This document shows, one piece after another, positions 6,291-35,385 of a stretch of 64,000 bases of DNA. Numbering within the stretch: the first letter of the stretch is position 1; the number at the start of each line of letters is the position of its first letter. Location: the IMG/VR virus record IMGVR_UViG_3300044957_000763, positions 248,001 through 312,000 of that record. One strand, given 5' to 3'. Below the pieces are notes generated by a model. That model saw only the letters and a list, made by a program, of their open reading frames with translations, made no database searches and had not been told where the DNA came from. Position numbers and translations under genes: made by a program.

Positions 6291-7646
6291 CCGTTCCTGT
6301 AAATCTACAAAAATCTACAAGTTTAAGTTTCAATCAGCTAAACCTATTGCTCGTCGCCGTTAGGCGACGTAGGCTTGTCTTAATGGATTGACAACTACTG
6401 GCGTTGCGGCAACGCTCCTATCCCATTCACAGCTGAAGGCTGTGTTTGGGAATACTTTTCGTCCTATGTTTGCACTGCCGTTGGCATCTGCATTAAGCAG
6501 CGCGCCTTCGGCACTGCGATACAAGCCTCGTTCTATACGAGTTCCAGAGAATGATTGTTCATTTTTCTGTCCTTTCTCCCAGACAGGGATTTCATCCCTA
6601 TCCAAGAACGATGCTTGACTTGTGTATGATTCTTCAGTAAAGATAACATCAATTCCCAAGGCGTTAGCCTTGTACTGAATTTTCTGCAACAAGTTACAGA
6701 AAGGAACAGATTGGAAGTTTTGATTAGTTTTCTTTCCTAGTTTTATCCCTGTTTTCCATCCATCGTTTTTTCCAATAACGATTGTTCCGATATTGTGCTT
6801 CGCACAATTCTCGATAATCATTTTGCTGACGTGATGGAAGTAATTTTCCAGTCTGAAGTATCTCTTTCGAGATGTTTTCTTACTGATATTTTTGTTGTAC
6901 CAGCGATTGAAACTCTTTACTATACGACCGTTGATAAGTATTGGACTATGCTTATCTGAAGTTATCGTTGCTAGATTATTCAATCCTATGTCAATGCAAC
7001 AAAAATTGTTCTTGTTGGCTCTCGCTTTCGGCAGAGCCTTCTGTTCGTATTGGACTTCGACCATAAAACCGAAGGTTTTTGGTGTAGCCACTACTTGTTT
7101 GAACGGTTTATCTGATTTGATGCTAAAGCATCCATTTGTTGGAGTTAGGAAATCCAACGGTTTTCCGCTTTGTCCTCCTTTAATAGTTTCATTATAGAAA
7201 ATGACTTGAGCTAGTTTCTTTTTATAATGCGGGGGCTTAGGACATCCAAGGAATTTGGATTTATCTTTTTTGTAAGCAGAGAGCGCCTTTCGATAATTAC
7301 TCCAATCCGTCAATACCTGACGGATTGTCTGCTTCGCCGTCTTTGTATTGTGTAGATTTTTGAAACAGTCTAGATGTTGAGTTTCTTTAATTAGAATACT
7401 AATATCTGGAAGTCTTTCTTTCTCAAACCAAGCCTTTCTCATGAGAAAATTGCATCTGTTGTAGAGTTCTTTGCTCATGCTTGCCAGTCTGAGCAATTCT
7501 TTCGTTGCTTTGATATGATGTCTTTCTACCACAATCACATAGTATATTTAAGGACATACCCTATCTTCACCTTATTGATTTATGAAGAAAGTAGAAATTG
7601 TTAGATATTCCTAGATTTTTGTAGATTTTTCAGAACAGTTTCGCAA
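6291..7646 (-). mobile_element. non-autonomous tnpB-only element with IS607-like ends
   Basis: GG at both junctions; perfect 17-bp inverted repeat at 6301-6317 and 7612-7628; removing the element restores the HNH C-terminus. Confidence 0.7.
6360..7538 (-). CDS. tnpB: TnpB RNA-guided endonuclease (rearranged RuvC-II type, no Zn finger)
   Basis: CIDIGLNNLAT, IGKNDGWK, EESYTSQASFLD, NADANGSANI. Confidence 0.9.
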   Translation of the reverse strand: MIVVERHHIKATKELLRLASMSKELYNRCNFLMRKAWFEKERLPDISILIKETQHLDCFKNLHNTKTAKQTIRQVLTDWSNYRKALSAYKKDKSKFLGCPKPPHYKKKLAQVIFYNETIKGGQSGKPLDFLTPTNGCFSIKSDKPFKQVVATPKTFGFMVEVQYEQKALPKARANKNNFCCIDIGLNNLATITSDKHSPILINGRIVKSFNRWYNKNISKKTSRKRYFRLENYFHHVSKMIIENCAKHNIGTIVIGKNDGWKTGIKLGKKTNQNFQSVPFCNLLQKIQYKANALGIDVIFTEESYTSQASFLDRDEIPVWEKGQKNEQSFSGTRIERGLYRSAEGALLNADANGSANIGRKVFPNTAFSCEWDRSVAATPVVVNPLRQAYVA

Positions 7647-8408
7647 CCCTTTAGGTGGCTTCTCTACACCCAGCCGCCGACACCATTTGTGAATGGCTGA
7701 ATCTGATACCCCAAGGTCGACGGCCAGTTGAGTCAATGGCTTAGACCATACGAGGGCCTTGAGCTCTTCCGCTGTTGGATGAGGAACTTTGTGACGAGAG
7801 GGACGGGGATTGGTGCGCCAGGTGGCACATTTGGCGCAATGTTTGAGCCTGCTATTAAATTGTGCATTACAATTTGGACATACTTTTTTGGGTTTGGCAT
7901 GAGCACAATTTCTTCCAGCAAATGTATCCGTTTGTGTATGGCAATGTGGGCACAAGATGCGCAAATTTTCAATACGGTTGTCGTTATTGTTGCCGTTAAT
8001 ATGGTCAAGCTGAAGAACCAGTGGCTTGTTGTTCCACACAGGTTTTTGCCCGCACTCTTCGCAAATGTCCAATTTTAGGCCAGCACTAATGAGTTTTCGC
8101 TTGAGGTCGCGACCATTGATGCCTGGGCCATTCAAAACTAAATATTCATTTAGGTTCCGACCAGTTTTCCATCCAGCTTTCTCGCCACTAGAGTATTGCT
8201 TAATGTGCGAATCATCAATGTTGTCTTGTTGAATTCTTGCTTTGAGAGTTCGTGAATAATACCCTCGATGGTCAAATCCCCAATAGTCCAATACTTCTGT
8301 ATATGTTTTTGATTTTAACACCAAAGCCTCAAAATCTATGACCGGCATTGTCCAAATTGGATTTCTTTTTCTTCTTGGCTTGATATTAGCAGAACAATTT
8401 TTCATCAT
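7611..8408 (-). CDS. HNH homing endonuclease
   Basis: CEECG...LQLDHINGNNNDNRIENLRILCPHCH; starts about 30 nt downstream of the tRNA cluster. Confidence 0.9.
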   Translation of the reverse strand: MMKNCSANIKPRRKRNPIWTMPVIDFEALVLKSKTYTEVLDYWGFDHRGYYSRTLKARIQQDNIDDSHIKQYSSGEKAGWKTGRNLNEYLVLNGPGINGRDLKRKLISAGLKLDICEECGQKPVWNNKPLVLQLDHINGNNNDNRIENLRILCPHCHTQTDTFAGRNCAHAKPKKVCPNCNAQFNSRLKHCAKCATWRTNPRPSRHKVPHPTAEELKALVWSKPLTQLAVDLGVSDSAIHKWCRRLGVEKPPKGLRNCSEKSTKI

Positions 8409-8438
8409 TGTGTTGTTCTTATACAACAAATGATAATT

Positions 8439-8513
8439 TGGCTCCCCGAGGAGGATTCGAACCGCCTTCTGGACGTTCAAAGCGTCCTATCCTAGCCAAT
8501 AGACGACCGGGGA
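8439..8513 (-). tRNA. tRNA-Gln(TTG)
   Basis: acceptor TCCCCGG/TCGGGGA, anticodon arm GGACG-CTTTGAA-CGTCC, TTCGAAT loop, encoded CCA. Confidence 0.92.
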
Positions 8514-8516
8514 GTA

Positions 8517-8591
8517 TGGCACCCAACCAAGGATTCGAACCTCGCTCTCGTGGTCCAGGGCCACGCGTCACTACCGCTAGACTAGTTGGGT
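8517..8591 (-). tRNA. tRNA-Gln(CTG) with C33
   Basis: acceptor ACCCAAC/GTTGGGT, anticodon arm CGTGG-CCCTGGA-CCACG, encoded CCA. Confidence 0.9.
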
Positions 8592-8594
8592 GTT

Positions 8595-8687
8595 TGGCTG
8601 CCGCTCCAGGGCTCGAACCTGGAAATCCATTCTGCATGGTCTTCTCGTTCAAAGCGAGAGATGTTCCCTAAATTACACTAAGCGGCA
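8595..8687 (-). tRNA. tRNA with TTG (Gln) anticodon and a 20-nt variable region
   Basis: acceptor TGCCGCT/AGCGGCA, arm TCTCG-CTTTGAA-CGAGA, variable AGACCATGCAGAATGGATTT, T-arm CCAGG-TTCGAGC-CCTGG, G73-CCA. Confidence 0.88.
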
Positions 8688-8779
8688 ATGCTGGTTTGTT
8701 GTGTGGGAAGCGCTGCTGTCTAACGTTTGCTGTTATTTTGCGAACGTTGTCGTGAGCTTGGCAGTATATTGCGTCAGCA

Positions 8780-8884
8780 TCACGCGACAGAGCGCGTGCG
8801 TTGCTGTTGTTGCTGGCGCACAGCAAGGATGCCGAGGGTGGAGGCCTTCGGTGAGCTGGTTCTGACTGTGTATGTCTTGCTCAT
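8780..8884 (-). CDS. 34-aa putative leader peptide with a Gln5 run
   Basis: AAGGA 8 nt before ATG; MSKTYTVRTSSPKASTLGILAVRQQQQQRTRSVA; upstream TGG-TATAAT at 8984-8976. Confidence 0.55.
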   Translation of the reverse strand: MSKTYTVRTSSPKASTLGILAVRQQQQQRTRSVA

Positions 8885-9036
8885 GTTAGTTTTCCTTGCG
8901 TTAATCAAGGCGAATCGGATATAAACTTGTCTCTCTCAGACTTGTTACTTATAGTCGATTCGCTTTGACATTGTTATTATACCACGTTTTGACGAGTAAA
9001 ACCTGTTTTTGTTCCAAAAAGGTAAAAAAGTCTGAT

Positions 9037-9735
9037 TTATGCTCCATGAACAGAGAAGCTGGACAGTGTGTATGCCACTGCGATTCCAACAATCATTGAC
9101 AGAATATTAATTTCTCGTCGGTTGCTTTTGTGTGTTTCTGGAATCATGTCAGCGGCCAGAATATAAATCAGTGTTCCGCACACGAATGCTGTTAGTGTGT
9201 CTGTTGCGATTGGAAGACCGATTGTGCCTGCTCCGAATCCCATCAGTGTTGCCACGATAATCAATCCAAACCATTCATAGATTACTTTGGTTGGCATTTT
9301 GTGTGTGAGCGCCAGTGCGACTAGTGCAATGCCGTCAATGGCTCGGTGCACACTGAGACCAATCAGTGCGTCTCTGACGTTACTGCTAGACAGAGAATAG
9401 ATGGCAAGACCGTCTAGTATTGCGTGCACAATAAAGCCAGTTACAAGTAACTTGGAGATTCCTTTGTGTTGTTCGTTGCTGCAATTGTGTTCGTCATGAG
9501 GACACATTGCCAAGCACGACGACAGCAAAAAATACAGACCAAATCCGACAACAACGGCAAATCCATTTGCGTGTGCCGATTCGTTTTGCATGATTTCTGG
9601 AATCAAATGCGTAAAAATGGTTGTGAGCAGTAGTCCGGCTCCGAACGGAATCAACCATTTCTTGATTTCCTTATTGTGTGCGAGGATGATTCCAAGTACT
9701 GGCGTGGTGATTGCGAATAGTATTAATCCGAGCAT
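9037..9735 (-). CDS. ZIP-family (ZupT-like) metal transporter
   Basis: multiple TM segments; HAILDG and HRAIDG metal-site helices; His-rich loop. Confidence 0.85.
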   Translation of the reverse strand: MLGLILFAITTPVLGIILAHNKEIKKWLIPFGAGLLLTTIFTHLIPEIMQNESAHANGFAVVVGFGLYFLLSSCLAMCPHDEHNCSNEQHKGISKLLVTGFIVHAILDGLAIYSLSSSNVRDALIGLSVHRAIDGIALVALALTHKMPTKVIYEWFGLIIVATLMGFGAGTIGLPIATDTLTAFVCGTLIYILAADMIPETHKSNRREINILSMIVGIAVAYTLSSFSVHGA

Positions 9736-10436
9736 TTGTTTTTTACCAATTGTGTTTTGTTCCAGTTATCGTCGCTTTTGAACCATGGTGCTACCATTTT
9801 ATATCTTCCTGTGCACCATTGTCCATCGCCGCTTTTCAAGTATACCCCTTCTCTGGCTTGATTTTGTGCATACAAACTTGGGCCATCGCGCATTTCCAAT
9901 AATGTTTTTGGCGTACACGTTCCACTGTGGATAACGCCAATCGTTGAGAACCCTGCTTCTCTAAGTAATTTCAAAGCCAGTGTTGGGTCAAGGAATTTTC
10001 GCTCATCAGAGTGATAGATGTCGTATGCCACAAACCAATCAGGCAATTCATTATATGCGATTGTGTGTTTTGCGAAAAGCCATTCGCCGTAAATACTGAT
10101 TTGGCCACCAGTGGCTTTGGACACACTTCTGATTTTATCAGCGTTCTCATATAGCCAAGTCCAAACCCTGGAGAACTGCTGTTGTGCTGGTGTTTTGCGT
10201 GCTGAATACCCTTTGCGCAGAATATGGCTGCGATTGCGGACTATTGGTTCGCCTTTGTGTATGGAAATACCCATGTTCGCACCGTCGATTTTCTCTTGAA
10301 TGCTGATTTCTCCGGCCAGAAACATTTCCATATCGCAGATAGTAGCTACACGGTCGTCGCTATCGGCATTGGGTTCCAACGGCAAGTGCATTGTCCGTGG
10401 GAATTCTGGCAATATTCTTTTCTCGATTTCGTACAT
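9723..10436 (-). CDS. ATP-dependent RNA ligase (Rnl2-like)
   Basis: nucleotidyltransferase motifs EKIDGAN, IYGEW, FVAYDI, REGVYLK, KMV. Confidence 0.85.
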   Translation of the reverse strand: MYEIEKRILPEFPRTMHLPLEPNADSDDRVATICDMEMFLAGEISIQEKIDGANMGISIHKGEPIVRNRSHILRKGYSARKTPAQQQFSRVWTWLYENADKIRSVSKATGGQISIYGEWLFAKHTIAYNELPDWFVAYDIYHSDERKFLDPTLALKLLREAGFSTIGVIHSGTCTPKTLLEMRDGPSLYAQNQAREGVYLKSGDGQWCTGRYKMVAPWFKSDDNWNKTQLVKNKCSD

Positions 10437-10645
10437 TATGTTTGTTCTTTGAATCCTTCACAATTGTCGCCTTGTGCTGTCATGGTGTTGTTGGCGACCC
10501 TTTCGTCTATCAAATCCTTCAAATCTGAATGCTTGAGGCAACAAAATTCACCCGGCAAGCCTCCAAGGTATCGACACGTGGCACTACGTTGCCCAATACG
10601 ACAAATTTCATTTACATGTGATATAGGAAGTAATACGTTTGACAT
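10436..10645 (-). CDS. small Cys-containing hypothetical protein
   Basis: 69-aa ORF; TGC-TATAAT 5 nt before ATG. Confidence 0.6.
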   Translation of the reverse strand: MSNVLLPISHVNEICRIGQRSATCRYLGGLPGEFCCLKHSDLKDLIDERVANNTMTAQGDNCEGFKEQT

Positions 10646-10646
10646 G

Positions 10647-10690
10647 CCTGATTATAGCACATAACATTCCTGATTATAGCACATAACATT
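10647..10690. repeat. perfect 22-bp tandem duplication containing a -10 box
   Basis: CCTGATTATAGCACATAACATT x2. Confidence 0.95.
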
Positions 10691-10705
10691 GAGTATAATC
10701 TGAAT

Positions 10706-11185
10706 ATGAATTTGATATATGCGCCGGAAAAAATTGATGTGACTGATTGGCACTCTGTGTTTCTCGCGGGACCAACTCCTAGAGACCCCAGTGTTGCGTC
10801 GTGGCGGCCAAAGGCGATTCAGTTATTTTCGGACATGAAGTTTAATGGTTCACTTTATATTCCAGAGCCAAGGAATGGTGGATTCGACCAAGATGATGAG
10901 GCCCGGTCAGAATGGGAGCATCTTGGTATAGCGAATGCCGGCGCAGTTTTATTCTGGGTTCCTCGCGACATTGCCGGCGGCATGCCTGGGTTTACAACCA
11001 ATGTGGAGTTTGGGTGGGTGGTTCGCATGGTATATGAAGAGGGCCATCCAGACAGGGTGTTTTATGGTCGCCCAGACCATGCTGAAGAGTGCAAGTATTT
11101 AGATTGGTTATATCATCGGTACGCGGAAAAAGAACCTCACAGTGACCTTGAGTCTATGGTTAGGTGTGTTGTTGATTGGTTGTAA
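10706..11185 (+). CDS. nucleoside 2-deoxyribosyltransferase-like protein
   Basis: VFLAGPTPR..SWR, EWE, VLFWVPR, TTNVEFG. Confidence 0.8.
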   Translation: MNLIYAPEKIDVTDWHSVFLAGPTPRDPSVASWRPKAIQLFSDMKFNGSLYIPEPRNGGFDQDDEARSEWEHLGIANAGAVLFWVPRDIAGGMPGFTTNVEFGWVVRMVYEEGHPDRVFYGRPDHAEECKYLDWLYHRYAEKEPHSDLESMVRCVVDWL

Positions 11186-11198
11186 CAACACCCAACGA

Positions 11199-12011
11199 CT
11201 ATCCCATTGCTTCCATTTCTTTCTTGAATGCTCGGTTTGCGGCACTCGAGAATATGCCAATGTAGATTGACATAAATGCGATTTCAGCAAAGATAAACAC
11301 CATTGCCAGGATTTTGCCAGGTATTGTGATGGGGAACAGGTCTCCGTACCCGGTGGTTGATGCGGTGACAACTGAATACCAAAAGCCATCGAACACCCTG
11401 ACATATTTGTCTGGTTGTGCAAACTTTTCTATTTCGTAAATCAGCGCCCCAAACAAGGCAATAATACCAAGGTTGAATGCAAAGATTTGACCAATCATTT
11501 GTTTGCCTTTCCAGATTTCTGTGATAAGTTGTTGCGCTTTGGGGCTGTATCGGTAGAATTTCAAAACGCTAACAATCCTCATAGCGCGAACTGCCCCCAG
11601 CCACGAAGCTGGTACAAAAAACCCTAACCAAAATGGCAATATAGACATCAGGTCAATGATTGCGGTGAGTTTTCGCGGCCACATGCGCGGATTACTACTG
11701 TTTTTCCATCGCACGAAGTATTCAATGGTGAAGACACACGCGATAAACCTTTCCACCCACAAGAAGAATATAGGTGACTCTAGTGAGTGTGCAGTGCGAT
11801 ATACGTCAGTTTCAACAACATAGCATCCTAATCTGACAAACACTAGCACCAGGATGAATCGTTCAATCCACCAGCTTAATGGTTGTCCGCGCATGCTTCT
11901 GGCAAGTGCGCCTATGGGCGCAAGTGTAAGGTCGCTTACGACATTTCCAACTGTTTGAATGCCGCCTACGATTCCTAATGGTTCCGTCGAATCATCTATG
12001 ATTTTAGGCAT
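11199..12011 (-). CDS. potassium channel (6TM, voltage-gated type)
   Basis: selectivity filter TTGYGD; S4-like RAMRIVSVLKFYRY. Confidence 0.9.
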   Translation of the reverse strand: MPKIIDDSTEPLGIVGGIQTVGNVVSDLTLAPIGALARSMRGQPLSWWIERFILVLVFVRLGCYVVETDVYRTAHSLESPIFFLWVERFIACVFTIEYFVRWKNSSNPRMWPRKLTAIIDLMSILPFWLGFFVPASWLGAVRAMRIVSVLKFYRYSPKAQQLITEIWKGKQMIGQIFAFNLGIIALFGALIYEIEKFAQPDKYVRVFDGFWYSVVTASTTGYGDLFPITIPGKILAMVFIFAEIAFMSIYIGIFSSAANRAFKKEMEAMG

Positions 12012-12678
12012 TGTTTTTATCCTCGAGTTGGGTCAACCTGGTCATGAACCGGTCGATTCCAATTGCAAATCCTATTCCTTCGGCATAGGCCCCACCGCCA
12101 ACGATTTGACCTTGTGCGCCCATGTCTGGGATTGAGATTTCAAAACCGTTTCCTGTATAGTATGACAGACCACGAGATGCCGCTGAATCAATCACCAGAA
12201 TGTTTTCTGGCACAAATGCGACCAGCATGCTTTTGGCCATTGCAATCATCTCATCAATGTAGTCTTTTCTAGGATTAAGTACCTCTACTCCGAATTGAGA
12301 AAACTCTCGGTATCGTCCGTCTTGAGGTTGTTCATAGCGCCAGCATCGGACGTCGTAGAACATTTTAACGTCCTTGTCAAAGCGATATTGTTGAGCAATC
12401 AACTGACACGTTGCCGTGCCCTCTGGTCTTAGACACAATGCGCGACCTTTCTTGTCTGGGAATCGGTACATTTGTCTTTCGACCAATTCCGGTCCCACTT
12501 TATCCAGGTACACTTCTTCTTTCTCGATTGAAGGAAGGATGATTTCTTTGTATCCGTATCCCAGTGCAATATCTGCCCAAGTATTGACAATCTTTCGCCT
12601 AAGCTCTGCTGTTGAACCGTACAGTATACGAGTGCCCTTGACTTGTTTTTCGCCTAGTTTGATTTCTCCATCTATCAT
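12004..12678 (-). CDS. histidyl-tRNA synthetase catalytic core only (about 224 aa)
   Basis: KGTR, LRPEGTA, RYEQPQDGRYREFSQFGVE, RGLSYYTG, GGG, GFAIGIDR; no anticodon-binding domain. Confidence 0.8.
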   Translation of the reverse strand: MIDGEIKLGEKQVKGTRILYGSTAELRRKIVNTWADIALGYGYKEIILPSIEKEEVYLDKVGPELVERQMYRFPDKKGRALCLRPEGTATCQLIAQQYRFDKDVKMFYDVRCWRYEQPQDGRYREFSQFGVEVLNPRKDYIDEMIAMAKSMLVAFVPENILVIDSAASRGLSYYTGNGFEISIPDMGAQGQIVGGGAYAEGIGFAIGIDRFMTRLTQLEDKNNA

Positions 12679-12760
12679 TGCGGTACCACTTGCGTTTTCA
12701 TGCGCTTTGTGCGATAATACCATACGTAAGGCAAAAAATGCCACGGAGAAAAAATCAAGA

Positions 12761-13331
12761 ATGTCGTATTTCAGTAAAATTTGGAACAGGTGGTTCGGTC
12801 GCAAATCGTCTGGTTCTGTTTCGTCTCAATCAACAACAGTTTCTACATCATCTAATGTGGATACGCTAAATGTAAGCACATCGCCCTCGAGTCCACAAAC
12901 CAATAGCAAAATACGCACTGCGTCACGAGGTCAAAGTGGTGCAGGTTATAGCGGCGAATCATCCGCTTCATACGTTGACCCTGCAACTGTAATCATGGTT
13001 GCTAATAATTACAGTGACCCTAGTCCAGCGCACACAGAAGAACAGCGAGTGTCTTCCGGCGAACCTTCACCCTATCTTGCGCCATATGAGGCCCATGAAC
13101 AATACTATCATGACTCGTCCGGTTCGTCACATCGAAATAGTGACAACAGTAGTCATGATTCCAGCTATGGCCATCACGAGTCAAAGCTATAGCCATCACG
13201 ATTCTGGTAGCAGCTATCACGAGTCAAGCTATAGCCATCACGATTCTGGTAGCAGCCATCACGATTCTGGCAGTAGTTATAGCTCAGACTCTGGCGGTGG
13301 TTGTGACGGTGGCGGTGGCGGTGGCGACTAA
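12761..13331 (+). pseudogene. Ser/His/Gly-rich low-complexity protein with an apparent 1-nt frameshift at 13183-13185
   Basis: track ORFs 12416 and 12999 join if one A is removed; the repeat copy at 13218-13256 has AA where this copy has AAA. Confidence 0.65.
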
Positions 13332-13354
13332 GCCACATAAGCATTTGAATTCTT

Positions 13355-13392
13355 AAGTGATTGCTATGGCTTACTCATAGCAATCACTTTTT
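13355..13392 (+). terminator. intrinsic terminator between convergent genes
   Basis: 14-bp perfect stem AAGTGATTGCTATG/CATAGCAATCACTT plus T-run. Confidence 0.8.
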
Positions 13393-13470
13393 CATTAGGT
13401 CTTCGTCTGTTGGTTTCACCTTGCGGTACAAACTTCAAGCACTCTTCAAAGCTGGCATTCATGTTGTCTT

Positions 13471-14568
13471 TTAGACAGTACACGCCATTGCTGAGTTGGT
13501 GTACGCAGGGTCGTTAGTAACATCTAACGCCTCTTTTGCCCATGTTGGCAACATGAATTTATTTGATGCTTCTTCGCTTTCAAACTCGCATTCTAGTGTG
13601 ATAAGACCATCAAGATGTCCATGATAGATGTCTAACTCAAGTGTGTGTCCGTCATATGGTATGTAATAACGAGTTTTACAAACACTTGGCCAGTTTGCGC
13701 CCATAGTGTCAAAGAGCTCCATAGGTATTTTGGTTTCCCATTCCATTCTCTTAAGTGCGCCGCTACCTTTAATGCAAAGTTCAAATACAGACTTATCGTA
13801 AGACCTAGTCCTGATGACAAATCTGTCATCTTTCATAACATAGTGTTGGTTGATTTCTTTGCTGGTGGCAGTTTCTAAAACTTCTCTTGGCACACTATTT
13901 AGCTTAAACTTGCGTTCGATTTCAACATCAAGAATAGGGTGCAACAAAGACAGAATTGCTTGCAACTTAGCGTCTAAACTTTGTCCCGCTGGAATGAACA
14001 CCCAATTGGGGTGGTTTTTCCATGCTTCAACCAGTACAGTGTCTCGTTCAATGGCCATTTTTGCTGTGTCATACCGAGCTGGATTTGTAGAGCACAACCT
14101 GTCGTAGTCTTCGGCACTATGGCAAGCTAATGATTGCATGTGAATAACCATGCTGTATCTGGACATTACTGCGTCAATGTCCATTCCATATCGTGTGGAC
14201 ATTGTAATGTTCCCACCTGGTAGATATGCAGCCGGGTCTAACAATCCACGGTCAAAGAACACTGCGCGTTTTTTGGATTCTGCAGCCGCGTGTAGGTGCC
14301 CGTTTTCCATTGCCACCTGCGTCGGAATAATGGTTTCGTTGATGTAGTTCAGCCAATCTTCAGAAAACATTACATCACTGCCTGGTTTTGGGTATCCATT
14401 TGTCAGCAACATCGACGCAACCTCTGTCATAAATCTGGCTTTGTCTGCATAAGCGCCTTCTAAATAGTTAATGACAGTGCTTTTTCCAGCCAGCGGACCT
14501 CCAGTGAAAACAATGCGGTGTTGAACCTGGTTGACAATTGGGTCGGTGATTTGCTTGTGGTTTAGCAT
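13471..14568 (-). CDS. P-loop kinase-like (AAA_28) plus CYTH domain fusion
   Basis: GGPLAGKST, FFDRG; EIERKF, EWET, KTRY, LELDIY, LECEF. Confidence 0.85.
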   Translation of the reverse strand: MLNHKQITDPIVNQVQHRIVFTGGPLAGKSTVINYLEGAYADKARFMTEVASMLLTNGYPKPGSDVMFSEDWLNYINETIIPTQVAMENGHLHAAAESKKRAVFFDRGLLDPAAYLPGGNITMSTRYGMDIDAVMSRYSMVIHMQSLACHSAEDYDRLCSTNPARYDTAKMAIERDTVLVEAWKNHPNWVFIPAGQSLDAKLQAILSLLHPILDVEIERKFKLNSVPREVLETATSKEINQHYVMKDDRFVIRTRSYDKSVFELCIKGSGALKRMEWETKIPMELFDTMGANWPSVCKTRYYIPYDGHTLELDIYHGHLDGLITLECEFESEEASNKFMLPTWAKEALDVTNDPAYTNSAMACTV

Positions 14569-14709
14569 ATTGTATTATGGCACAATAATCAAAAGGGGTA
14601 TCTTGAAGTCCGCCGCCCCGCCAGCAATGCAGACCCTATCGGATTGCCAGCGCAATATGCACATCAATGCAAGAGGTCGCAGATGTTTTTTATTACACCA
14701 AGATGTATG

Positions 14710-15789
14710 CTAATCAACTGAGCTAACTGGAATCGCTTTAACAGTATTCCAGTCCAGCAGGGCGAATGCATCTTCGGTCATTGGCCCTGCTGTGGTAAAT
14801 CCAACAGCCATTCTGCACCTTGGGTGATTGTTCAACCTTCTGCATCCGTACATTAGCCAATCAGGTCGCAAGTTTCTGGGCACATTCTTAATTCCACATT
14901 CCGTAACCACTATTTGGCATTCTGTGTCCTCGGGGCTGATTGCGTCGTGTATTGCAACAAAGTCGACAAATCTTTGATACAGCCTATCGCCCCATTGTTG
15001 TCTTGTCATTCCCGCTTGATAATCCGGTGCATATACATGCACGTTTATAAACGAACTGGCTTTTAAGAAAGGTGCCTTGAGTGTGGTTATCTCTTGTCTT
15101 AAACCATCGGCATACTGGTATTCATAGCTTGGTCTTATCAGCAACGCACCTTGAGTGTTTACAGAATTTGGCCCGAGCCATCTGTTGTTCATCATTTCTT
15201 TGAAGCTCTGACTAAAAGTGCCATACGGGGCATATCCGGGGTTTTCGTTAACCTCGGAGTCTATTACCCAAGCCGATTCATTCTCGTCTTCAACCATTCC
15301 ATATTGTTGCCAAGACAATCCCTTTTCGCGATATGCAACCGCAAAAGTATCAATAACTTGGTTTCTCAACCATATCATTGGTTCCCAAAATGCTACATCG
15401 ACGTTTTTCCTTGGGTTGGTATATTCGTTCCAGTTTTTCCAAAGGTGCACATCAAGTTCATTAGTGAAATCCATTTTGTGGTATTCGGCATAATGCATTC
15501 GCCATGCTTTAGTGTTGGCAATATACGTGTTTGTTTGAACAATAATTCCAAGTCCTGCGGTCGCAGCTTCAAGTGCGATAAACCGATGAATTTCTTGCTG
15601 GGTGTAAGTGTTCGGCCCTTTTGCGCCTATTTCAGATAGCGCAGTATCAATCCGCACAACGTTGGCCTTATTGGCCTTTGCGGATTGAATACAGCGACGA
15701 TGAATTGCTCTATTGGGAGCATTTGCGCTGGTGCCCTCATAACCCCACGGGAGATGAAGCCCAACCAGCTTAGGAGTAATTGTGACCAT
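14710..15789 (-). CDS. putative clan GH-A glycoside hydrolase
   Basis: DENES (acid/base-like), INVHVY, VVTECG (nucleophile-like). Confidence 0.5.
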   Translation of the reverse strand: MVTITPKLVGLHLPWGYEGTSANAPNRAIHRRCIQSAKANKANVVRIDTALSEIGAKGPNTYTQQEIHRFIALEAATAGLGIIVQTNTYIANTKAWRMHYAEYHKMDFTNELDVHLWKNWNEYTNPRKNVDVAFWEPMIWLRNQVIDTFAVAYREKGLSWQQYGMVEDENESAWVIDSEVNENPGYAPYGTFSQSFKEMMNNRWLGPNSVNTQGALLIRPSYEYQYADGLRQEITTLKAPFLKASSFINVHVYAPDYQAGMTRQQWGDRLYQRFVDFVAIHDAISPEDTECQIVVTECGIKNVPRNLRPDWLMYGCRRLNNHPRCRMAVGFTTAGPMTEDAFALLDWNTVKAIPVSSVD

Positions 15790-15821
15790 AGAATCATATT
15801 ATGATTCTTAGTTTAACAGCC

Positions 15822-17501
15822 CTACATACTGTCTGGCATAGAAACCCCAAGGATGCCACCAACCAGAGACAGTGTTTGCTTTGTTAATTGCACAATTTGC
15901 AATCGGGCATAAGTTTGTTCCGGTTCGTTTTCTTGGATAACTTTACAGTTTTCATAGAATTCGTGAAACATCTTTGATAGCTCTACGGCAAAGTGCGCCA
16001 ATTGATGAACACTGCATGTCTCGGCGCATTTGTGAACCTCATCATTTAGCGATAGACACTTGACAATCAGCTTGTTTTCTTGAATGGTCAACTTGTGATT
16101 CCAGTCAAATTCAACATGCTGCGACGGTGCTTTGGCCAAGATTGACGCACATCGCGCATGGGCATACTTGACATAGAAACAAGGGTTGTCTTGCGCTTGC
16201 TTAACTGCAAGTCCTATATCAAAGTCCATGTGCTTGCTGGCAGAAACATACAGGTAGAAGAATCGCACCACGTCTTTTGCAGTGTCGAAATCTGACCCAA
16301 GTTCTTGCGCAACCTCGTTAATCAAATCAACCAGGGTATACAAGTTGCCATCTCGCTTTCGCATTAACACAGGCTGACCTTCTTTGATAAATCGCACAGC
16401 CTGGAAAATCACAACATTGAGCGATTCTGGGTTATGACCAAGTGCAGCCACACCTGCCTTTAATCGCGGAATGTAACCATGATGGTCTGGTCCAAACAAG
16501 TCAACCACATGCTGGTTACCTCGAGCGTATTTGTCGTGATGATAACTGATGTCACTTGCGGCATATGTCATTCGTCCGTCTGACCGCACTAGAACTCGGT
16601 CGTCGGAATCTCCGTACTGTTTGGTCAATAACCACGTTGCGCCATCAATTTTTGCAGATTGGCCACTGTCTTGAAGGTGTTGTAATGTGACACCCACCTT
16701 ACCAGACTCAATCATCGCCTGCTCACTGACCCACATGTCGAACTCAACTCCGAACTGAGCGAGTTCTTGTTTCTGATTGTCAATCATCATTTGTTGTGAG
16801 GTTGATTGATACCAATTCGTGTCGGCGTTTATTAAGTGCGCCGCATCGTACATTGATACCAGCACACTTGCAATGCCCTCAACGTATTCTCCTTTGTATC
16901 CATTTTCAGGCATGTCGTAAGACATACCAAGTAAATTGAACACATGGTGCTTCACGCTTTCGGAAAACAGTCGCATTTGCTCGCTGTTGACACCATCATT
17001 GATGTAATACTCTCGTGTCACATTGTGACCAATCATAGTCAAGACTCGAGACAGCACATCACCAATAGCAGCGCCTCGGGCAGCGGCTACCGTAATCGGT
17101 CCGTTTGGGTTGACCGAAACATACTCAACACTATAGCTCTCAGGTTGTTTGGTGCTTGATATTGTTTCCCCACCAAGTGCGCTTTGTGTTGCGTGTTGCA
17201 ATAGTGTCGTGTCTACTTTGACGTTGAGAAACCCTGGCTTAGACCATATAAACGTCAAACCCTGCTCTTCAAGACCGGCGAAGCCTTTGGTCTGGTTAAT
17301 TGCATGGAACACACCATAACTGTCGGTGCCAGAGATTTTAGCTGCCCGCATACAAAATGTTGTGGTGTAATCATATTCTATATTAGATGCTGATGGCTGA
17401 AGGTCTATTGGAATAGACAACAACGAATCATGCAACAATCCTGCAATCACAGTCTGTTCGACGGCGTGTTCAATATGTTTTTCAATATCCAGTTGCAACA
17501 T
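15822..17501 (-). CDS. argS: arginyl-tRNA synthetase with a degenerate HIGH motif
   Basis: VEYVSVNPNGP, REYYIND, RSDGRMTYAASD, FGPDHHGY, NPCFYVKYAHAR; 559 aa. Confidence 0.92.
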   Translation of the reverse strand: MLQLDIEKHIEHAVEQTVIAGLLHDSLLSIPIDLQPSASNIEYDYTTTFCMRAAKISGTDSYGVFHAINQTKGFAGLEEQGLTFIWSKPGFLNVKVDTTLLQHATQSALGGETISSTKQPESYSVEYVSVNPNGPITVAAARGAAIGDVLSRVLTMIGHNVTREYYINDGVNSEQMRLFSESVKHHVFNLLGMSYDMPENGYKGEYVEGIASVLVSMYDAAHLINADTNWYQSTSQQMMIDNQKQELAQFGVEFDMWVSEQAMIESGKVGVTLQHLQDSGQSAKIDGATWLLTKQYGDSDDRVLVRSDGRMTYAASDISYHHDKYARGNQHVVDLFGPDHHGYIPRLKAGVAALGHNPESLNVVIFQAVRFIKEGQPVLMRKRDGNLYTLVDLINEVAQELGSDFDTAKDVVRFFYLYVSASKHMDFDIGLAVKQAQDNPCFYVKYAHARCASILAKAPSQHVEFDWNHKLTIQENKLIVKCLSLNDEVHKCAETCSVHQLAHFAVELSKMFHEFYENCKVIQENEPEQTYARLQIVQLTKQTLSLVGGILGVSMPDSM

Positions 17502-34776: not shown

Positions 34777-35385
34777 ATGATTATCAACGTACTTCCACCA
34801 GAAAAAATACGCGATGAGTTTGGTTGGGCTAGCATCGAGTGGTGGCAGTATATGTTTTGCACTGTTCAGCGTGTGGATTACATTTACGAACCATTCATGA
34901 CTATAAATGTTGATAGCTTTGATTCTCTTCGGAATGCTTTGCACGCCATAGAAGAAGAAGCACTGATGTACATGGTCAACGAAACAGCCAGAGGCAAGTC
35001 CGCTGAAATCAAAGACTTGATTCCCGATAACGACCTTGTGATTATCAGCAAACACACCGACATATCATTGGTCAACCAGTTATATGCCCCTAGTGTACTT
35101 CAGTGTTGGCACAGGATGTTCGAGCACGAAGGTGATTTGTACGATGACACCGACCTGGTTTTACGCCACGGCATGGTCTTAGATGATAAGATACCAATAG
35201 CCGTCAAAATTGATAATTTGCCTGGTGAGTGCGAACTCGGAAACATGGGTTCTGCTGTTATCTCTGCGGTCATTGTTGAATCAGACGCGAGCAAACTCAA
35301 TTTTGAAACGCACACAATACACAGACTAAAGCCAGACAATGACAAAAAAGCCTCCACACTTGACATACTTTTGGGGATGCAATGA
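34777..35385 (+). CDS. hypothetical protein with KKASTLDILLG tail
   Basis: 202-aa ORF. Confidence 0.65.
   Translation: MIINVLPPEKIRDEFGWASIEWWQYMFCTVQRVDYIYEPFMTINVDSFDSLRNALHAIEEEALMYMVNETARGKSAEIKDLIPDNDLVIISKHTDISLVNQLYAPSVLQCWHRMFEHEGDLYDDTDLVLRHGMVLDDKIPIAVKIDNLPGECELGNMGSAVISAVIVESDASKLNFETHTIHRLKPDNDKKASTLDILLGMQ

What the first reader, a model, noticed from the sequence alone, without database searches (positions are those of the whole stretch)
8439..8984. Gln5 leader peptide directly upstream of three tRNA-Gln genes: possible codon-sensing attenuator controlling phage tRNA supply
Seen (minus strand): extended -10 TGG-TATAAT (8984-8976), SD AAGGA, and a 34-codon ORF (8884-8780) containing CAG CAA CAA CAG CAA, followed by 92 nt of C/A-rich, G-poor sequence, then tRNA-Gln(TTG, long arm), tRNA-Gln(CTG) and tRNA-Gln(TTG). 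The run uses both Gln codons, matching both anticodons downstream, and these are the only tRNAs found in the window. Established: his/trp/phe/thr attenuator peptides sense charged tRNA via runs of cognate codons. Inference: ribosome stalling at Gln5, when host tRNA-Gln is depleted or cut by an anticodon nuclease, switches on replacement tRNAs, perhaps through Rho-type termination since no clear intrinsic terminator is visible. Caveat: the peptide also contains KASTLGIL, one residue from the KASTLDIL tag, so it could simply be a small protein.
Basis: partly seen in the sequence, partly recalled or inferred. Interest (0 to 1): 0.8.

Follow-up and report, generated by a model that had tools for sequence, protein, structure and literature searches.

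The report
Gln-codon leader before phage tRNA-Gln genes
A clade of very large freshwater and wastewater phages keeps a folded RNA leader, holding a tiny reading frame with a run of glutamine codons, directly in front of its glutamine tRNA genes; this looks like a sensor of glutamine-tRNA supply, which would be a new target for a classic bacterial control principle, but regulation is not shown.

Summary

The window is part of a 479 kb IMG/VR viral contig. I recovered 19 related loci falling into three deep lineages. Every locus that has a tRNA-Gln array (1-5 very diverse copies) has exactly one copy of this ~280 nt leader directly upstream, and the leader occurs nowhere else.

- **RNA structure:** the leader is a conserved structured RNA. 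Of 60 predicted pairs, 97% are paired, and 15 show compensatory changes against 5.2 in shuffles.
- **ORF:** it stays open at 34-35 codons in all three lineages, although its first two thirds change freely.
- **Gln codons:** they persist as Q5, Q4 and QQRQ, twice through synonymous CAA-to-CAG changes.
- **"C/A-rich spacer":** this is really a conserved three-way junction that contains the stop codon.
- **Expression platform:** I found no intrinsic terminator and no alternative hairpins, so it is not a classical attenuator.

The best reading is a translated Gln-codon sensor that tunes tRNA-Gln output (about 0.45), possibly through Rho. The main rival is a processing or stability leader in which the ORF is incidental. 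No family in Rfam release 15 matches the motif.

The parts
8976..8984 (-). Extended -10 promoter TGGTATAAT. The predicted transcription start is G 8969, by analogy with the phage's leaderless genes, which place +1 six nt after the -10 box.
   Evidence: The motif is invariant in 10 of 11 distinct leaders; L018 has GTGTATAAT. TGNTATAAT occurs 14 times against 2.7 expected in the window.
8905..8968 (-). P1: a long 5'-terminal hairpin that starts one nt after the predicted start of the RNA.
   Evidence: RNAalifold and pair counts (helices 1-3): 23 pairs, 6 with changes on both sides. It is also predicted independently in single-sequence folds of window, L007, L011 and L018.
8893..8899 (-). Shine-Dalgarno-like GCAAGGA, 8 nt before the AUG. 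It can pair with the anti-SD UCCUUGC at 8829-8823.
   Evidence: AGGA is kept in all three lineages, 7-9 nt before the AUG. The SD:anti-SD helix appears in the minimum-energy fold of each lineage with different flanking pairs: GCAAGGA/UCCUUGC, AGGAC/GUCCU and AGGAA/UUCCU.
8780..8884 (-). Leader ORF of 34 codons plus a UGA stop. The first two thirds are variable; the last third is frozen.
   Evidence: The ORF is open in all 19 loci, with 34, 34 and 35 codons in the three lineages. The other frames carry stops in L011 and L018. P(open | shuffle) is 0.5, 0.27 and 0.27.
8852..8883 (-). P2: the helix UGAGC/GCUCA, which holds the UG of the start codon (8883-8879 paired with 8856-8852).
   Evidence: helix 4. 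It is invariant in 11 of 11 leaders, so there is no covariation test for it.
8832..8851 (-). P3: a hairpin inside the ORF.
   Evidence: (helices 5-6): 8 pairs, 6 with changes on both sides. Examples are CCGAGAAC/GUUCUCGG, CGAUGAUGG/CCAUCAUCG and CAAAUGC/GCAUUUG.
8823..8829 (-). Anti-SD UCCUUGC, inside the ORF (codons 19-21) and 7 nt upstream of the Gln run.
8801..8815 (-). Five consecutive Gln codons (CAG CAA CAA CAG CAA), lying in a stretch (8831-8796) that is single-stranded in the consensus structure.
   Evidence: The run is Q5 in the main lineage, Q4 in L011/L012 and QQRQ in L018.
8710..8795 (-). Three-way junction. P4 is 8795-8786 paired with 8720-8710; P5 is 8784-8751 and contains the UGA stop; P6 is 8748-8722.
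   Evidence: (helices 7-10). It is almost invariant in sequence. Both-side changes occur in P4 (U:A to A:U in L018) and in P6 (two pairs in L020-22).
8688..8709 (-). Single-stranded C/A-rich linker with almost no G, forming the 5' leader of the first tRNA.
   Evidence: Its length is 17-23 nt in most lineages. In L017 and L018 it is followed by extra spacer of about 85-90 nt before the first tRNA.
8595..8687 (-). tRNA-Gln(UUG), 93 nt, with a 4-bp variable arm, U1:A72, G73 and an encoded CCA.
8517..8591 (-). tRNA-Gln(CUG), 75 nt, with A1:U72, G73 and anticodon loop CCCUGGA (C33 in place of the usual U33).
8439..8513 (-). tRNA-Gln(UUG), 75 nt, with U1:A72 and G73.

Best explanation
The region is one transcription unit: a host-type extended -10 promoter, a ~280 nt structured leader RNA, and then an array of phage tRNA-Gln genes.

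The leader carries a short translated ORF whose only conserved coding content is a cluster of Gln codons near its end. I propose that this ORF reports the supply of charged tRNA-Gln to the transcript that makes more tRNA-Gln.

Proposed course of events (inferred, not shown):
1. The ribosome-binding site is free only until the anti-SD, about 65 nt downstream, has been transcribed. Essentially one pioneer ribosome therefore loads and follows RNA polymerase.
2. If Gln-tRNA is plentiful, that ribosome runs to the UGA. The UGA lies inside helix P5, and the last five codons form the 5' strand of helix P4.
3. While the ribosome sits there, the three-way junction cannot fold. The C-rich, G-poor 3' part of the leader stays naked. 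That gives a termination factor such as Rho, or a nuclease, access, and output of the array falls.
4. If the ribosome stalls on the Gln codons, the junction folds behind the polymerase and transcription runs into the tRNA genes.

The result would be feedback that raises phage tRNA-Gln when host tRNA-Gln is scarce, uncharged or destroyed.

What is shown:
- the anatomy of the unit;
- its conservation and covariation;
- its strict linkage to tRNA-Gln arrays.

What is inferred:
- translation of the ORF;
- stalling at the Gln codons;
- the direction of the effect;
- the factor that acts on the leader.
For: **Linkage**
- All 8 distinct tRNA-Gln arrays in 19 related loci have one leader copy directly upstream. 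A profile of the leader finds no other copy in 274 kb of window plus loci.

**Conserved RNA**
- 60 pairs are 97.4% paired. 15 pairs have changes on both sides, against 5.2 +/- 1.7 in shuffles (0 of 500) and 0-3 in slid controls.
- Single-sequence folds give z-scores of -6.8, -7.3, -8.5 and -3.9.
- G:U pairs fix the transcribed strand as minus.

**ORF**
- AUG, frame, length (34/34/35 codons) and UGA are kept in three lineages whose variable ORF segment is only 53-62% identical. This includes an in-frame 3-nt insertion.
- The other frames carry stops in the diverged lineages. P(open | shuffle) is 0.5 x 0.27 x 0.27.
- AGGA lies 7-9 nt before the AUG in all lineages. Internal genes of this phage use the same kind of SD.

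**Leader-peptide signature**
- There is no codon-position bias in the variable part (6/6/8), with mostly non-synonymous change. Gln codons are kept nonetheless, twice by synonymous CAA-to-CAG changes in L018.

**Specificity**
- This is the only (CAR)4-or-longer run in 64 kb, against 0.46 expected on both strands. It lies about 115 nt upstream of the only tRNAs, which read exactly these two codons.

**Geometry**
- The stop codon and the last codons lie in P5 and P4, and the anti-SD lies just 5' of the Gln run.
- Masking a ribosome at the stop codon removes P4 and P5. Masking it at the first Gln codons leaves the junction intact.

**Context**
- An RNA ligase gene sits one gene upstream (next to ZIP) in the ZIP-carrying loci, and an RlaP-type RNA-repair gene sits next to the ligase in L011. 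The tRNA-Gln copies are unusually diversified.
- This is consistent with the published idea that phage tRNAs replace tRNAs attacked by host nucleases (PMC10264068).
Against: - There is no intrinsic terminator and no pair of mutually exclusive hairpins. Every lineage predicts one stable fold.
- The candidate Rho entry site is largely base-paired and short where it is single-stranded.
- The Gln codons are identical at the nucleotide level in the main and L011 lineages, so RNA-level constraint could explain their conservation there.
- Only three independent lineages exist. The ORF-conservation statistic is therefore modest, roughly 0.004-0.04 depending on whether frame-keeping is counted.
- In L018 the run has decayed to QQRQ.
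- The SD is predicted to be sequestered, so the ORF may be poorly translated.
- Gene callers did not call the ORF, and no called protein resembles the peptide.
- No RNA-end or ribosome data exist. RNA-library contigs of relatives also cross the promoter, so they may be DNA carry-over or read-through.
- The host is unknown, so the presence of Rho is unknown.
Confidence: 0.45

Rival explanations
1. The leader is a structured non-coding 5' part of the tRNA precursor. Its job would be stability (a 5'-terminal hairpin), correct folding or processing of the array, or a role of its own as a stable small RNA after RNase P releases it. On this reading the ORF and the Gln codons are by-products of RNA-level constraints.
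For: - The fold is strong and covarying.
- The last 17 codons, including the Gln run, show no synonymous change across the main lineage, although the neighbouring ZIP protein is only 75-78% identical.
- The AUG and the stop codon both lie in invariant helices.
- The variable part shows no coding periodicity.
- There is no expression platform.
- From my own knowledge, phage T4 co-processes small stable RNAs with its tRNA cluster.
Against: - The frame stays open at the same length in three lineages, while the other frames close.
- The indel is in frame.
- AGGA keeps proper spacing before the AUG.
- The Gln codons lie in a stretch that is unpaired in the consensus, and two are kept by synonymous change in L018.
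- The codon run matches the tRNAs downstream and is unique in 64 kb.
Confidence: 0.32
2. The ORF encodes a functional micro-protein with a polar N-end, a hydrophobic middle and a Gln/Arg-rich C-end. It is simply co-transcribed with the tRNAs.
For: - The ORF is conserved in length and has an SD.
- The hydropathy layout is similar in the three lineages.
Against: - Substitutions in the first 23 codons are mostly non-synonymous, with no third-position excess.
- Only 9 of 34 columns are invariant, and most of those lie in RNA helices.
- A profile search of 1.8 billion representative proteins finds no homologues.
Confidence: 0.1
3. The leader senses its signal directly as RNA. The three-way junction would be an aptamer (for glutamine, for example), or the exposed CAA/CAG triplets would pair with tRNA-Gln anticodons in the manner of a T-box.
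For: - The junction nucleotides are almost invariant, as in aptamers.
- The Gln triplets are single-stranded and cognate to both anticodons.
Against: - There is no match to any Rfam family, including T-box and the glutamine riboswitches, even at E up to 10.
- No UGGC is present to pair with the GCCA 3' end, by my reading of the leader sequences.
- No terminator or SD of a downstream gene is available to act on.
Confidence: 0.08

Closest known systems
Leader-peptide transcription attenuators of amino-acid operons (trpL, hisL, pheL, thrL, leuL)
   Same: - A constitutive promoter is followed by a short ORF with an RBS in a structured leader.
- A run of codons is cognate to what the operon supplies.
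- The peptide is otherwise unconstrained, and the ORF end overlaps the regulatory RNA structure.
- From my own knowledge, sequestration of the leader RBS after a first round of translation has been described for the trp leader.
   Different: - The controlled genes are tRNA genes, not enzymes.
- There is no terminator hairpin with a U tract and no alternative 1:2 / 2:3 / 3:4 pairings.
- I know of no Gln-codon attenuator.
- The element is in a phage.
pheM leader of the pheST (phenylalanyl-tRNA synthetase) operon
   Same: A cognate-codon leader peptide controls a component of the translation apparatus for the same amino acid (from my own knowledge).
   Different: pheM works through a classical intrinsic terminator and controls a synthetase, not tRNA genes.
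Rho-dependent leader-ORF switches (mgtL of mgtA with Pro codons; tnaC of the tna operon)
   Same: - These leaders have no intrinsic terminator.
- The position of a ribosome on a short ORF decides whether downstream RNA is open to Rho (from my own knowledge; reviewed in PMC12360218, which I found but did not read in detail).
- The 3' leader here has a C:G ratio of about 2.
   Different: - Rho dependence is untested and the host is unknown.
- The C-rich part is mostly a conserved three-way junction.
T-box riboswitch
   Same: Both would read tRNA status through a codon-like triplet in a leader RNA.
   Different: - There is no Stem I, specifier loop or T-box sequence, and no Rfam match.
- T-boxes control synthetase and amino-acid genes and need no translation.
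Phage tRNA clusters as replacements for tRNAs attacked by host nucleases (PMC10264068; PMC11464382; PMC11555353)
   Same: - The phage carries extra, sequence-diversified tRNAs for one anticodon family, some with altered anticodon loops (C33) or an added arm.
- RNA ligase and RNA-repair genes lie in the neighbourhood.
   Different: - Those studies do not describe a codon-sensing leader in front of the tRNA genes, as far as the passages I searched show.
- No Gln-specific nuclease is tied to this host. Retron Eco2 is reported to cut tRNA-Gln among several tRNAs (PMC12916289).

Membership tests
Classical ribosome-mediated (leader-peptide) transcription attenuator | Short leader ORF with a start codon and a ribosome-binding site, maintained in relatives | tested here: met
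   The ORF has 34/34/35 codons and AGGA lies 7-9 nt before an invariant AUG in three lineages. The other frames are closed in the diverged lineages.
Classical ribosome-mediated (leader-peptide) transcription attenuator | Tandem regulatory codons cognate to the regulated product | tested here: met
   The run is Q5, Q4 and QQRQ, always upstream of tRNA-Gln(UUG/CUG). It is the only (CAR)4-or-longer run in 64 kb.
Classical ribosome-mediated (leader-peptide) transcription attenuator | Mutually exclusive antiterminator and terminator hairpins | tested here: not met
   Each lineage predicts a single conserved fold. Ribosome-masked folds give no new hairpin.
Classical ribosome-mediated (leader-peptide) transcription attenuator | Intrinsic terminator (G+C-rich hairpin plus U tract) before the regulated genes | tested here: not met
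   None lies on the minus strand between 8780 and 8688. Only L018 has an A+U-rich hairpin followed by a U-rich stretch in its extra spacer.
Classical ribosome-mediated (leader-peptide) transcription attenuator | Downstream expression responds to the charged cognate tRNA | not testable with these tools
   This needs reporter or RNA-end experiments.
Rho-dependent leader-ORF attenuator (mgtL / tnaC type) | C-rich, G-poor, unstructured Rho entry region of some tens of nt, exposed or hidden by the ribosome | tested here: inconclusive
   C is 28-35% and G 16-18% over 76-92 nt after the stop. Most of this region is paired in P4-P6. It is single-stranded only if a ribosome holds the 5' strands.
Rho-dependent leader-ORF attenuator (mgtL / tnaC type) | Termination depends on Rho | not testable with these tools
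   The host is unknown. This needs bicyclomycin treatment or in vitro Rho assays.
T-box riboswitch | Stem I with a specifier loop and a T-box antiterminator that pairs with the tRNA 3' end | tested here: not met
   No Rfam match at E up to 10. By my reading, the leader contains no UGGC.
Glutamine riboswitches (glnA RNA, Downstream-peptide) | Match to the family covariance model | tested here: not met
   No match.
Bacterial-type tRNA-Gln | Cloverleaf, UUG or CUG anticodon, weak 1:72 pair and G73 | tested here: met
   ARAGORN and Rfam recognise them. All 30 copies end in G73-CCA and have U1:A72 or A1:U72. Whether the long-arm and C33 copies are charged with Gln was not tested.

The most novel reading that the evidence does not exclude
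Phage tRNA genes are placed under autoregulation by a cognate-codon leader peptide. A pioneer ribosome reading four to five Gln codons decides, through a three-way junction that contains its own stop codon, whether the transcript continues into an array of diversified tRNA-Gln genes. The phage would then switch on replacement tRNA-Gln exactly when the host's charged tRNA-Gln is depleted, for instance by a tRNA-cutting defence. This would be the first attenuator-type control of tRNA genes and the first for glutamine, and it would use an expression platform without a terminator hairpin.
Probability: 0.35. Interest if true: 0.85.

Novelty: new variant of a known kind. Interest (0 to 1): 0.72.

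Why it matters
- **New target for an old principle.** Attenuation by runs of cognate codons is a textbook mechanism, but as far as I know it controls amino-acid biosynthesis and synthetase genes, not tRNA genes. It has not been described for glutamine or in a phage.
- **Link to phage defence.** A codon-sensing switch in front of replacement tRNAs would join two active fields: tRNA-targeting defence and phage counter-measures, and leader-ORF regulation. It would show that a phage can measure the state of the host translation apparatus and respond.
- **A clean test object.** It is about 280 nt long, with a defined ORF, Gln codons in an unpaired stretch that can be recoded without touching helices, and a compact junction.
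- **Value if the sensor idea fails.** The leader would still be a new, covariation-supported RNA motif strictly tied to tRNA-Gln arrays in huge phages. The arrays themselves, with long-arm and C33 tRNA-Gln variants, are unusual.

Tried and rejected
**Searches for relatives that gave nothing new**
- blastn of the region against 50,697 phage records gave only a 42-nt tRNA match.
- Three exact-pattern scans of IMG/VR found only the source contig.
- One scan was wasted on a gap range that excluded even the window itself.
- A relaxed junction pattern in IMG/VR and in the GTDB genomes hit only a GC-rich Acetobacter prophage gene by chance.
- The single metagenome scan gave one true relative (L013) and one chance hit in GC-rich coding DNA (L014).
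- Relatives were found instead through homologues of the flanking ZIP and RNA ligase proteins. At about 56% ligase identity (L024) the synteny and the tRNAs are gone.

**RNA and peptide searches**
- Rfam at gathering and at permissive thresholds gave nothing but tRNA.
- A profile of the peptide against 1.8 billion representative proteins gave only two spurious hits in long proteins. The word-index protein search refuses queries under 40 aa.

**Sequencing runs**
- The DNA comes from lake water, and relatives come from sediment, wastewater and sludge.
- Wastewater metatranscriptome runs hold relatives' leaders, but only as assembled contigs without ends or strand. Some cross the promoter, so they do not show a transcript.

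**Ideas rejected**
- tmRNA-like element: ARAGORN finds none, and the ORF has its own AUG and SD.
- boxA antitermination site: the GCUCU resemblance lies in helix P4 and is broken by the compensated change in L018.
- Gln run displayed in a hairpin loop: true only for the main lineage; the stem is broken in L011/L012.
- Gln run pairing with an upstream UUGCUGU: not conserved.
- A gene on the plus strand: the G:U pairs fix the strand as minus.
- KASTLDIL 'tag': it occurs once in the window, with 19 of 24 nt identity, and is not conserved.
Full report
**1. What is in the window**

On the minus strand the sequence reads as follows:
- TGGTATAAT at 8984-8976.
- About 85 nt of untranslated RNA.
- AAGGA at 8897-8893.
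- An ATG at 8884 that opens a 34-codon ORF ending with TGA at 8782-8780.
- Inside that ORF, CAG CAA CAA CAG CAA at 8815-8801.
- 92 nt of spacer.
- Three tRNA-Gln genes.

ARAGORN and Rfam agree on the tRNAs: 8687-8595 (UUG, 93 nt), 8591-8517 (CUG) and 8513-8439 (UUG). They find no other tRNA in the 64 kb. The first tRNA has a real extra arm, a 4-bp stem in the variable region. The second has C33 instead of U33.

A run of four or more CAR triplets occurs nowhere else on either strand of the window, against 0.46 expected.

**2. Where the DNA comes from**

The window is identical to part of IMGVR_UViG_3300044957_000763, a contig of 478,840 bp. It is also found in a second JGI sample and in a Logan assembly. 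The runs that hold it are lake-water metagenomes. Relatives occur in freshwater sediment, wastewater and sludge.

The window carries these genes:
- ArgRS and a HisRS-like core.
- An ion channel and a ZIP transporter.
- An RNA ligase.
- An FtsH-like protease.
- TnpB and HNH genes.
- A weak major-head-protein match.

This fits a huge phage.

Two properties of its gene starts matter for this finding:
- TGNTATAAT is five times over-represented (14 against 2.7).
- In 15 of 74 long ORFs a -10 box ends 5-6 nt before the ATG (14 of them at exactly 6), against 2.5% at random ATGs. Many genes therefore appear to be leaderless, while internal genes of operons carry AGGAG- or AAGGA-type sites.

By the same 6-nt rule, the leader RNA should start at G 8969.

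**3. Relatives**

DNA patterns found nothing beyond the source contig in IMG/VR. Homologues of the flanking ZIP protein (64-78% identity) and of the RNA ligase led to syntenic contigs. One metagenome pattern hit added another.

Every such locus that reaches far enough has an array of tRNA-Gln genes at this place, and no other amino acid is represented:
- The arrays hold 1 to 5 copies.
- The single exception is one copy in L008/L009 whose anticodon loop has drifted so that ARAGORN calls it Lys-CUU.
- The 30 copies are strikingly diverse in every arm. Several have 13-20 nt variable arms. All end in G73-CCA with a U:A or A:U first pair.

Every array is preceded by the same leader. A profile of the leader finds exactly one copy per locus, always directly upstream of the array. 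It finds nothing else in 274 kb of window plus loci.

The leaders fall into three deep lineages:
- A main group: window, L005-L010, L013, L017 and L020-L023.
- L011/L012.
- L018, which has lost ZIP and keeps a single tRNA-Gln.

**4. The leader is a conserved structured RNA**

The window's leader folds at -85.6 kcal/mol against -58.1 for shuffles, z = -6.8. L007, L011 and L018 give z = -7.3, -8.5 and -3.9 with the same architecture.

On the 11-sequence alignment A5, RNAalifold predicts 60 pairs. Counted independently:
- 97.4% of cells are paired.
- 15 pairs show changes on both sides, against 5.2 +/- 1.7 in column shuffles (0 of 500 reach 15).
- Versions with partners slid by one to three columns give 0-3 such pairs.

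The elements, in window coordinates:

| Element | Coordinates | Note |
|---|---|---|
| P1 | 8968-8905 | 5'-terminal hairpin, starting one nt after the predicted +1 |
| P2 | 8883-8879 with 8856-8852 | Holds part of the AUG; invariant |
| P3 | 8851-8832 | Hairpin inside the ORF; 6 covarying pairs |
| Unpaired stretch | 8831-8796 | Contains the Gln codons |
| P4 | 8795-8786 with 8720-8710 | Closing stem of the three-way junction |
| P5 | 8784-8751 | Contains the UGA stop |
| P6 | 8748-8722 | Third arm of the junction |
| Linker | 8709-8688 | Single-stranded, almost free of G |

Two further points:
- In each lineage's own minimum-energy fold, the AGGA pairs with a UCCU element just 5' of the Gln run. 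The flanking pairs differ by lineage: GCAAGGA/UCCUUGC, AGGAC/GUCCU and AGGAA/UUCCU.
- The hairpin that puts the Gln run in a loop in the window's fold is not kept in L011/L012.

It is mostly a conserved junction.

**5. Is the ORF real?**

For:
- AUG, frame, length and UGA are kept in all loci. The three lineages have 34, 34 and 35 codons, the last through a 3-nt insertion.
- The variable two thirds are only 53-62% identical between lineages. They stay open, while the other two frames carry 1-3 stops in L011 and L018.
- Shuffles of that segment stay open with probability 0.5, 0.27 and 0.27. The product is 0.036, and roughly ten times less if frame-keeping is counted.
- AGGA lies 7-9 nt before the AUG throughout.

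Against a functional peptide:
- Variable columns are spread 6/6/8 over the codon positions, and most codon changes between sub-lineages are non-synonymous.
- No called protein resembles it.

Unclear:
- The last 17 codons are identical at the nucleotide level within the main lineage, although the neighbouring ZIP protein is 75-78% identical. RNA-level constraint is therefore strong there (P4 and P5).
- The Gln codons themselves lie in the unpaired stretch. In L018 two of them are kept by synonymous CAA-to-CAG change and one is lost (CAG to CGC).

Together this is the signature of a regulatory leader ORF: it must be read, its Gln codons matter, and the rest of the peptide does not. With only three lineages this is suggestive, not proof.

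**6. How it may work**

A classical attenuator is excluded by two of its own defining features:
- There is no terminator hairpin with a U tract.
- There are no alternative pairings. Masking a ribosome at Gln1, Gln3, Gln5 or the stop codon only opens what the ribosome covers.

What the geometry does offer is the following.
- The anti-SD is made about 65 nt after the SD, so loading is favoured during a short co-transcriptional interval.
- A ribosome that reaches the UGA covers the 5' strands of P4 and P5. That keeps the following 75-90 nt, with a C:G ratio of about 2, unfolded.
- A ribosome held at the first Gln codons leaves the junction free to fold.

I therefore favour a switch in which the state of the junction decides the fate of the transcript. 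The most economical factor is Rho loading on the unfolded C-rich RNA, as in other leader-ORF systems without terminators (named from my own knowledge: mgtL, tnaC). This step is inference.

Other outputs are equally open, including nuclease access and RNase P or RNase E processing. The direction of the effect is also not established.

The biological sense would be feedback on phage tRNA-Gln supply. Several features fit the published view that phage tRNAs replace tRNAs attacked by host nucleases (PMC10264068):
- An RNA ligase gene in the same conserved block, one gene upstream of the leader.
- An RlaP-type repair gene in L011.
- The diversity of the tRNA-Gln copies.

tRNA-Gln is among the substrates reported for retron Eco2 (PMC12916289). 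No Gln-specific system is known for this unknown host.

**7. Rivals**

- **Non-coding leader.** The main rival is a purely non-coding leader for stability or processing, or a stable RNA of its own, with an incidental ORF (about 0.3). It explains the fold and the frozen nucleotides. It does not explain the open frame in diverged lineages, the in-frame indel, the SD spacing, or the match between the unique codon run and the tRNAs.
- **Functional micro-protein** (about 0.1). This is disfavoured by the substitution pattern.
- **Direct RNA sensor** (about 0.08). This has no family match and no platform.

**8. Comparison and novelty**

The element works most like a leader-peptide attenuator. It is not a member of the classical family, because two defining features were tested and not met. 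It may belong with Rho-dependent leader-ORF switches, but that is untested. It is not a T-box or a known riboswitch.

My literature searches found no description of a cognate-codon leader in front of tRNA genes. Absence from that library is not proof.

I rate it a new variant of a known kind, with a new RNA motif.

**9. Limits**

- There are only three independent lineages.
- The host is unknown.
- No strand-specific RNA ends or ribosome data exist. RNA-library contigs of relatives cover the leader and the tRNAs but also cross the promoter.
- The rest of the 479 kb genome could not be searched for other tRNA clusters with analogous leaders.

Noticed in passing
window, whole; e.g. 1742, 15789, 17501 (minus strand) and 35978, 41139, 41778, 43825, 50362 (plus strand): Many genes have a -10 box (TGnTAnAnT) ending exactly 6 nt before the ATG: 15 of 74 long ORFs against 2.5% at random ATGs. 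This suggests widespread leaderless mRNAs. SD-like sites appear mainly before internal genes of operons.
   Followed up: partly
window 8595-8687; also L005:6198-6378, L008:4543-4732, L011:4081-4171, L017:2890-2982: Some tRNA-Gln genes have a long, base-paired variable arm (88-93 nt in total), a shape normally limited to Leu, Ser and Tyr tRNAs in bacteria. They still carry the Gln-type U1:A72 (or A1:U72) and G73. Whether they are charged with Gln is unknown.
   Followed up: partly
window 8517-8591; L007:2885-2959; L008:4736-4810: One tRNA-Gln lineage has C33 instead of the near-universal U33. Its anticodon loop drifts between copies: CCCUGGA (CUG), CCUUGGA (UUG) and CCCUUGA (called Lys-CUU by ARAGORN). 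This could be loop variation of the kind proposed to evade anticodon nucleases.
   Followed up: partly
window 6360-8408; L020:8269-9830: Mobile genes sit directly downstream of the tRNA array and differ between relatives. The window has an HNH endonuclease (7611-8408) followed by TnpB (6360-7538); L020/L021 have an IS200/IS605 pair (Y1 transposase plus TnpB); L007 has HNH plus an AIPR-domain gene. The array's downstream edge looks like an insertion hot spot.
   Followed up: no
L017:2806-2889: Between the leader and the first tRNA lies an ~85 nt spacer that resembles pieces of two different tRNA-Gln copies of relatives. It looks like a chimeric dead tRNA. Together with the 1-5 copy range, it shows that the arrays turn over by recombination.
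   Followed up: no
L018:8990-9290: Six copies of a CTGGATACACC-like motif, spaced about 50-65 nt apart, follow the single tRNA-Gln. They run into a 101-aa ORF with repeated LDIPVKLD peptides. Their meaning is unknown.
   Followed up: no
L020:1-872: A glutamine synthetase gene (Gln-synt_N/C) lies about 6.6 kb upstream of the leader in this relative. This may be a further link to glutamine metabolism, or coincidence.
   Followed up: no
window 9723-17501 and syntenic loci: A conserved block lies upstream of the leader: ArgRS (seen in the window's own contig only), an AAA_28 protein, a HisRS-like class II core without an anticodon-binding domain, a voltage-gated-type ion channel, a nucleoside deoxyribosyltransferase-like gene (opposite strand), an RNA ligase and a ZIP metal transporter. 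L011 adds an RlaP RNA-repair gene beside the ligase.
   Followed up: partly
window 35347-35370 versus 8848-8825: KASTLDIL at the C-end of ORF 34777-35385 shares 19 of 24 nt with the KASTLGIL part of the leader ORF. It occurs once in the window, and the leader segment is not conserved in relatives. I judge this a coincidence.
   Followed up: yes
window 8395-8437 (minus strand): A 14-bp A+U-rich hairpin (-11.9 kcal/mol, z = -3.7) directly after the last tRNA encloses the start codons of the HNH gene. It has no U tract, so it is not a standard terminator.
   Followed up: no
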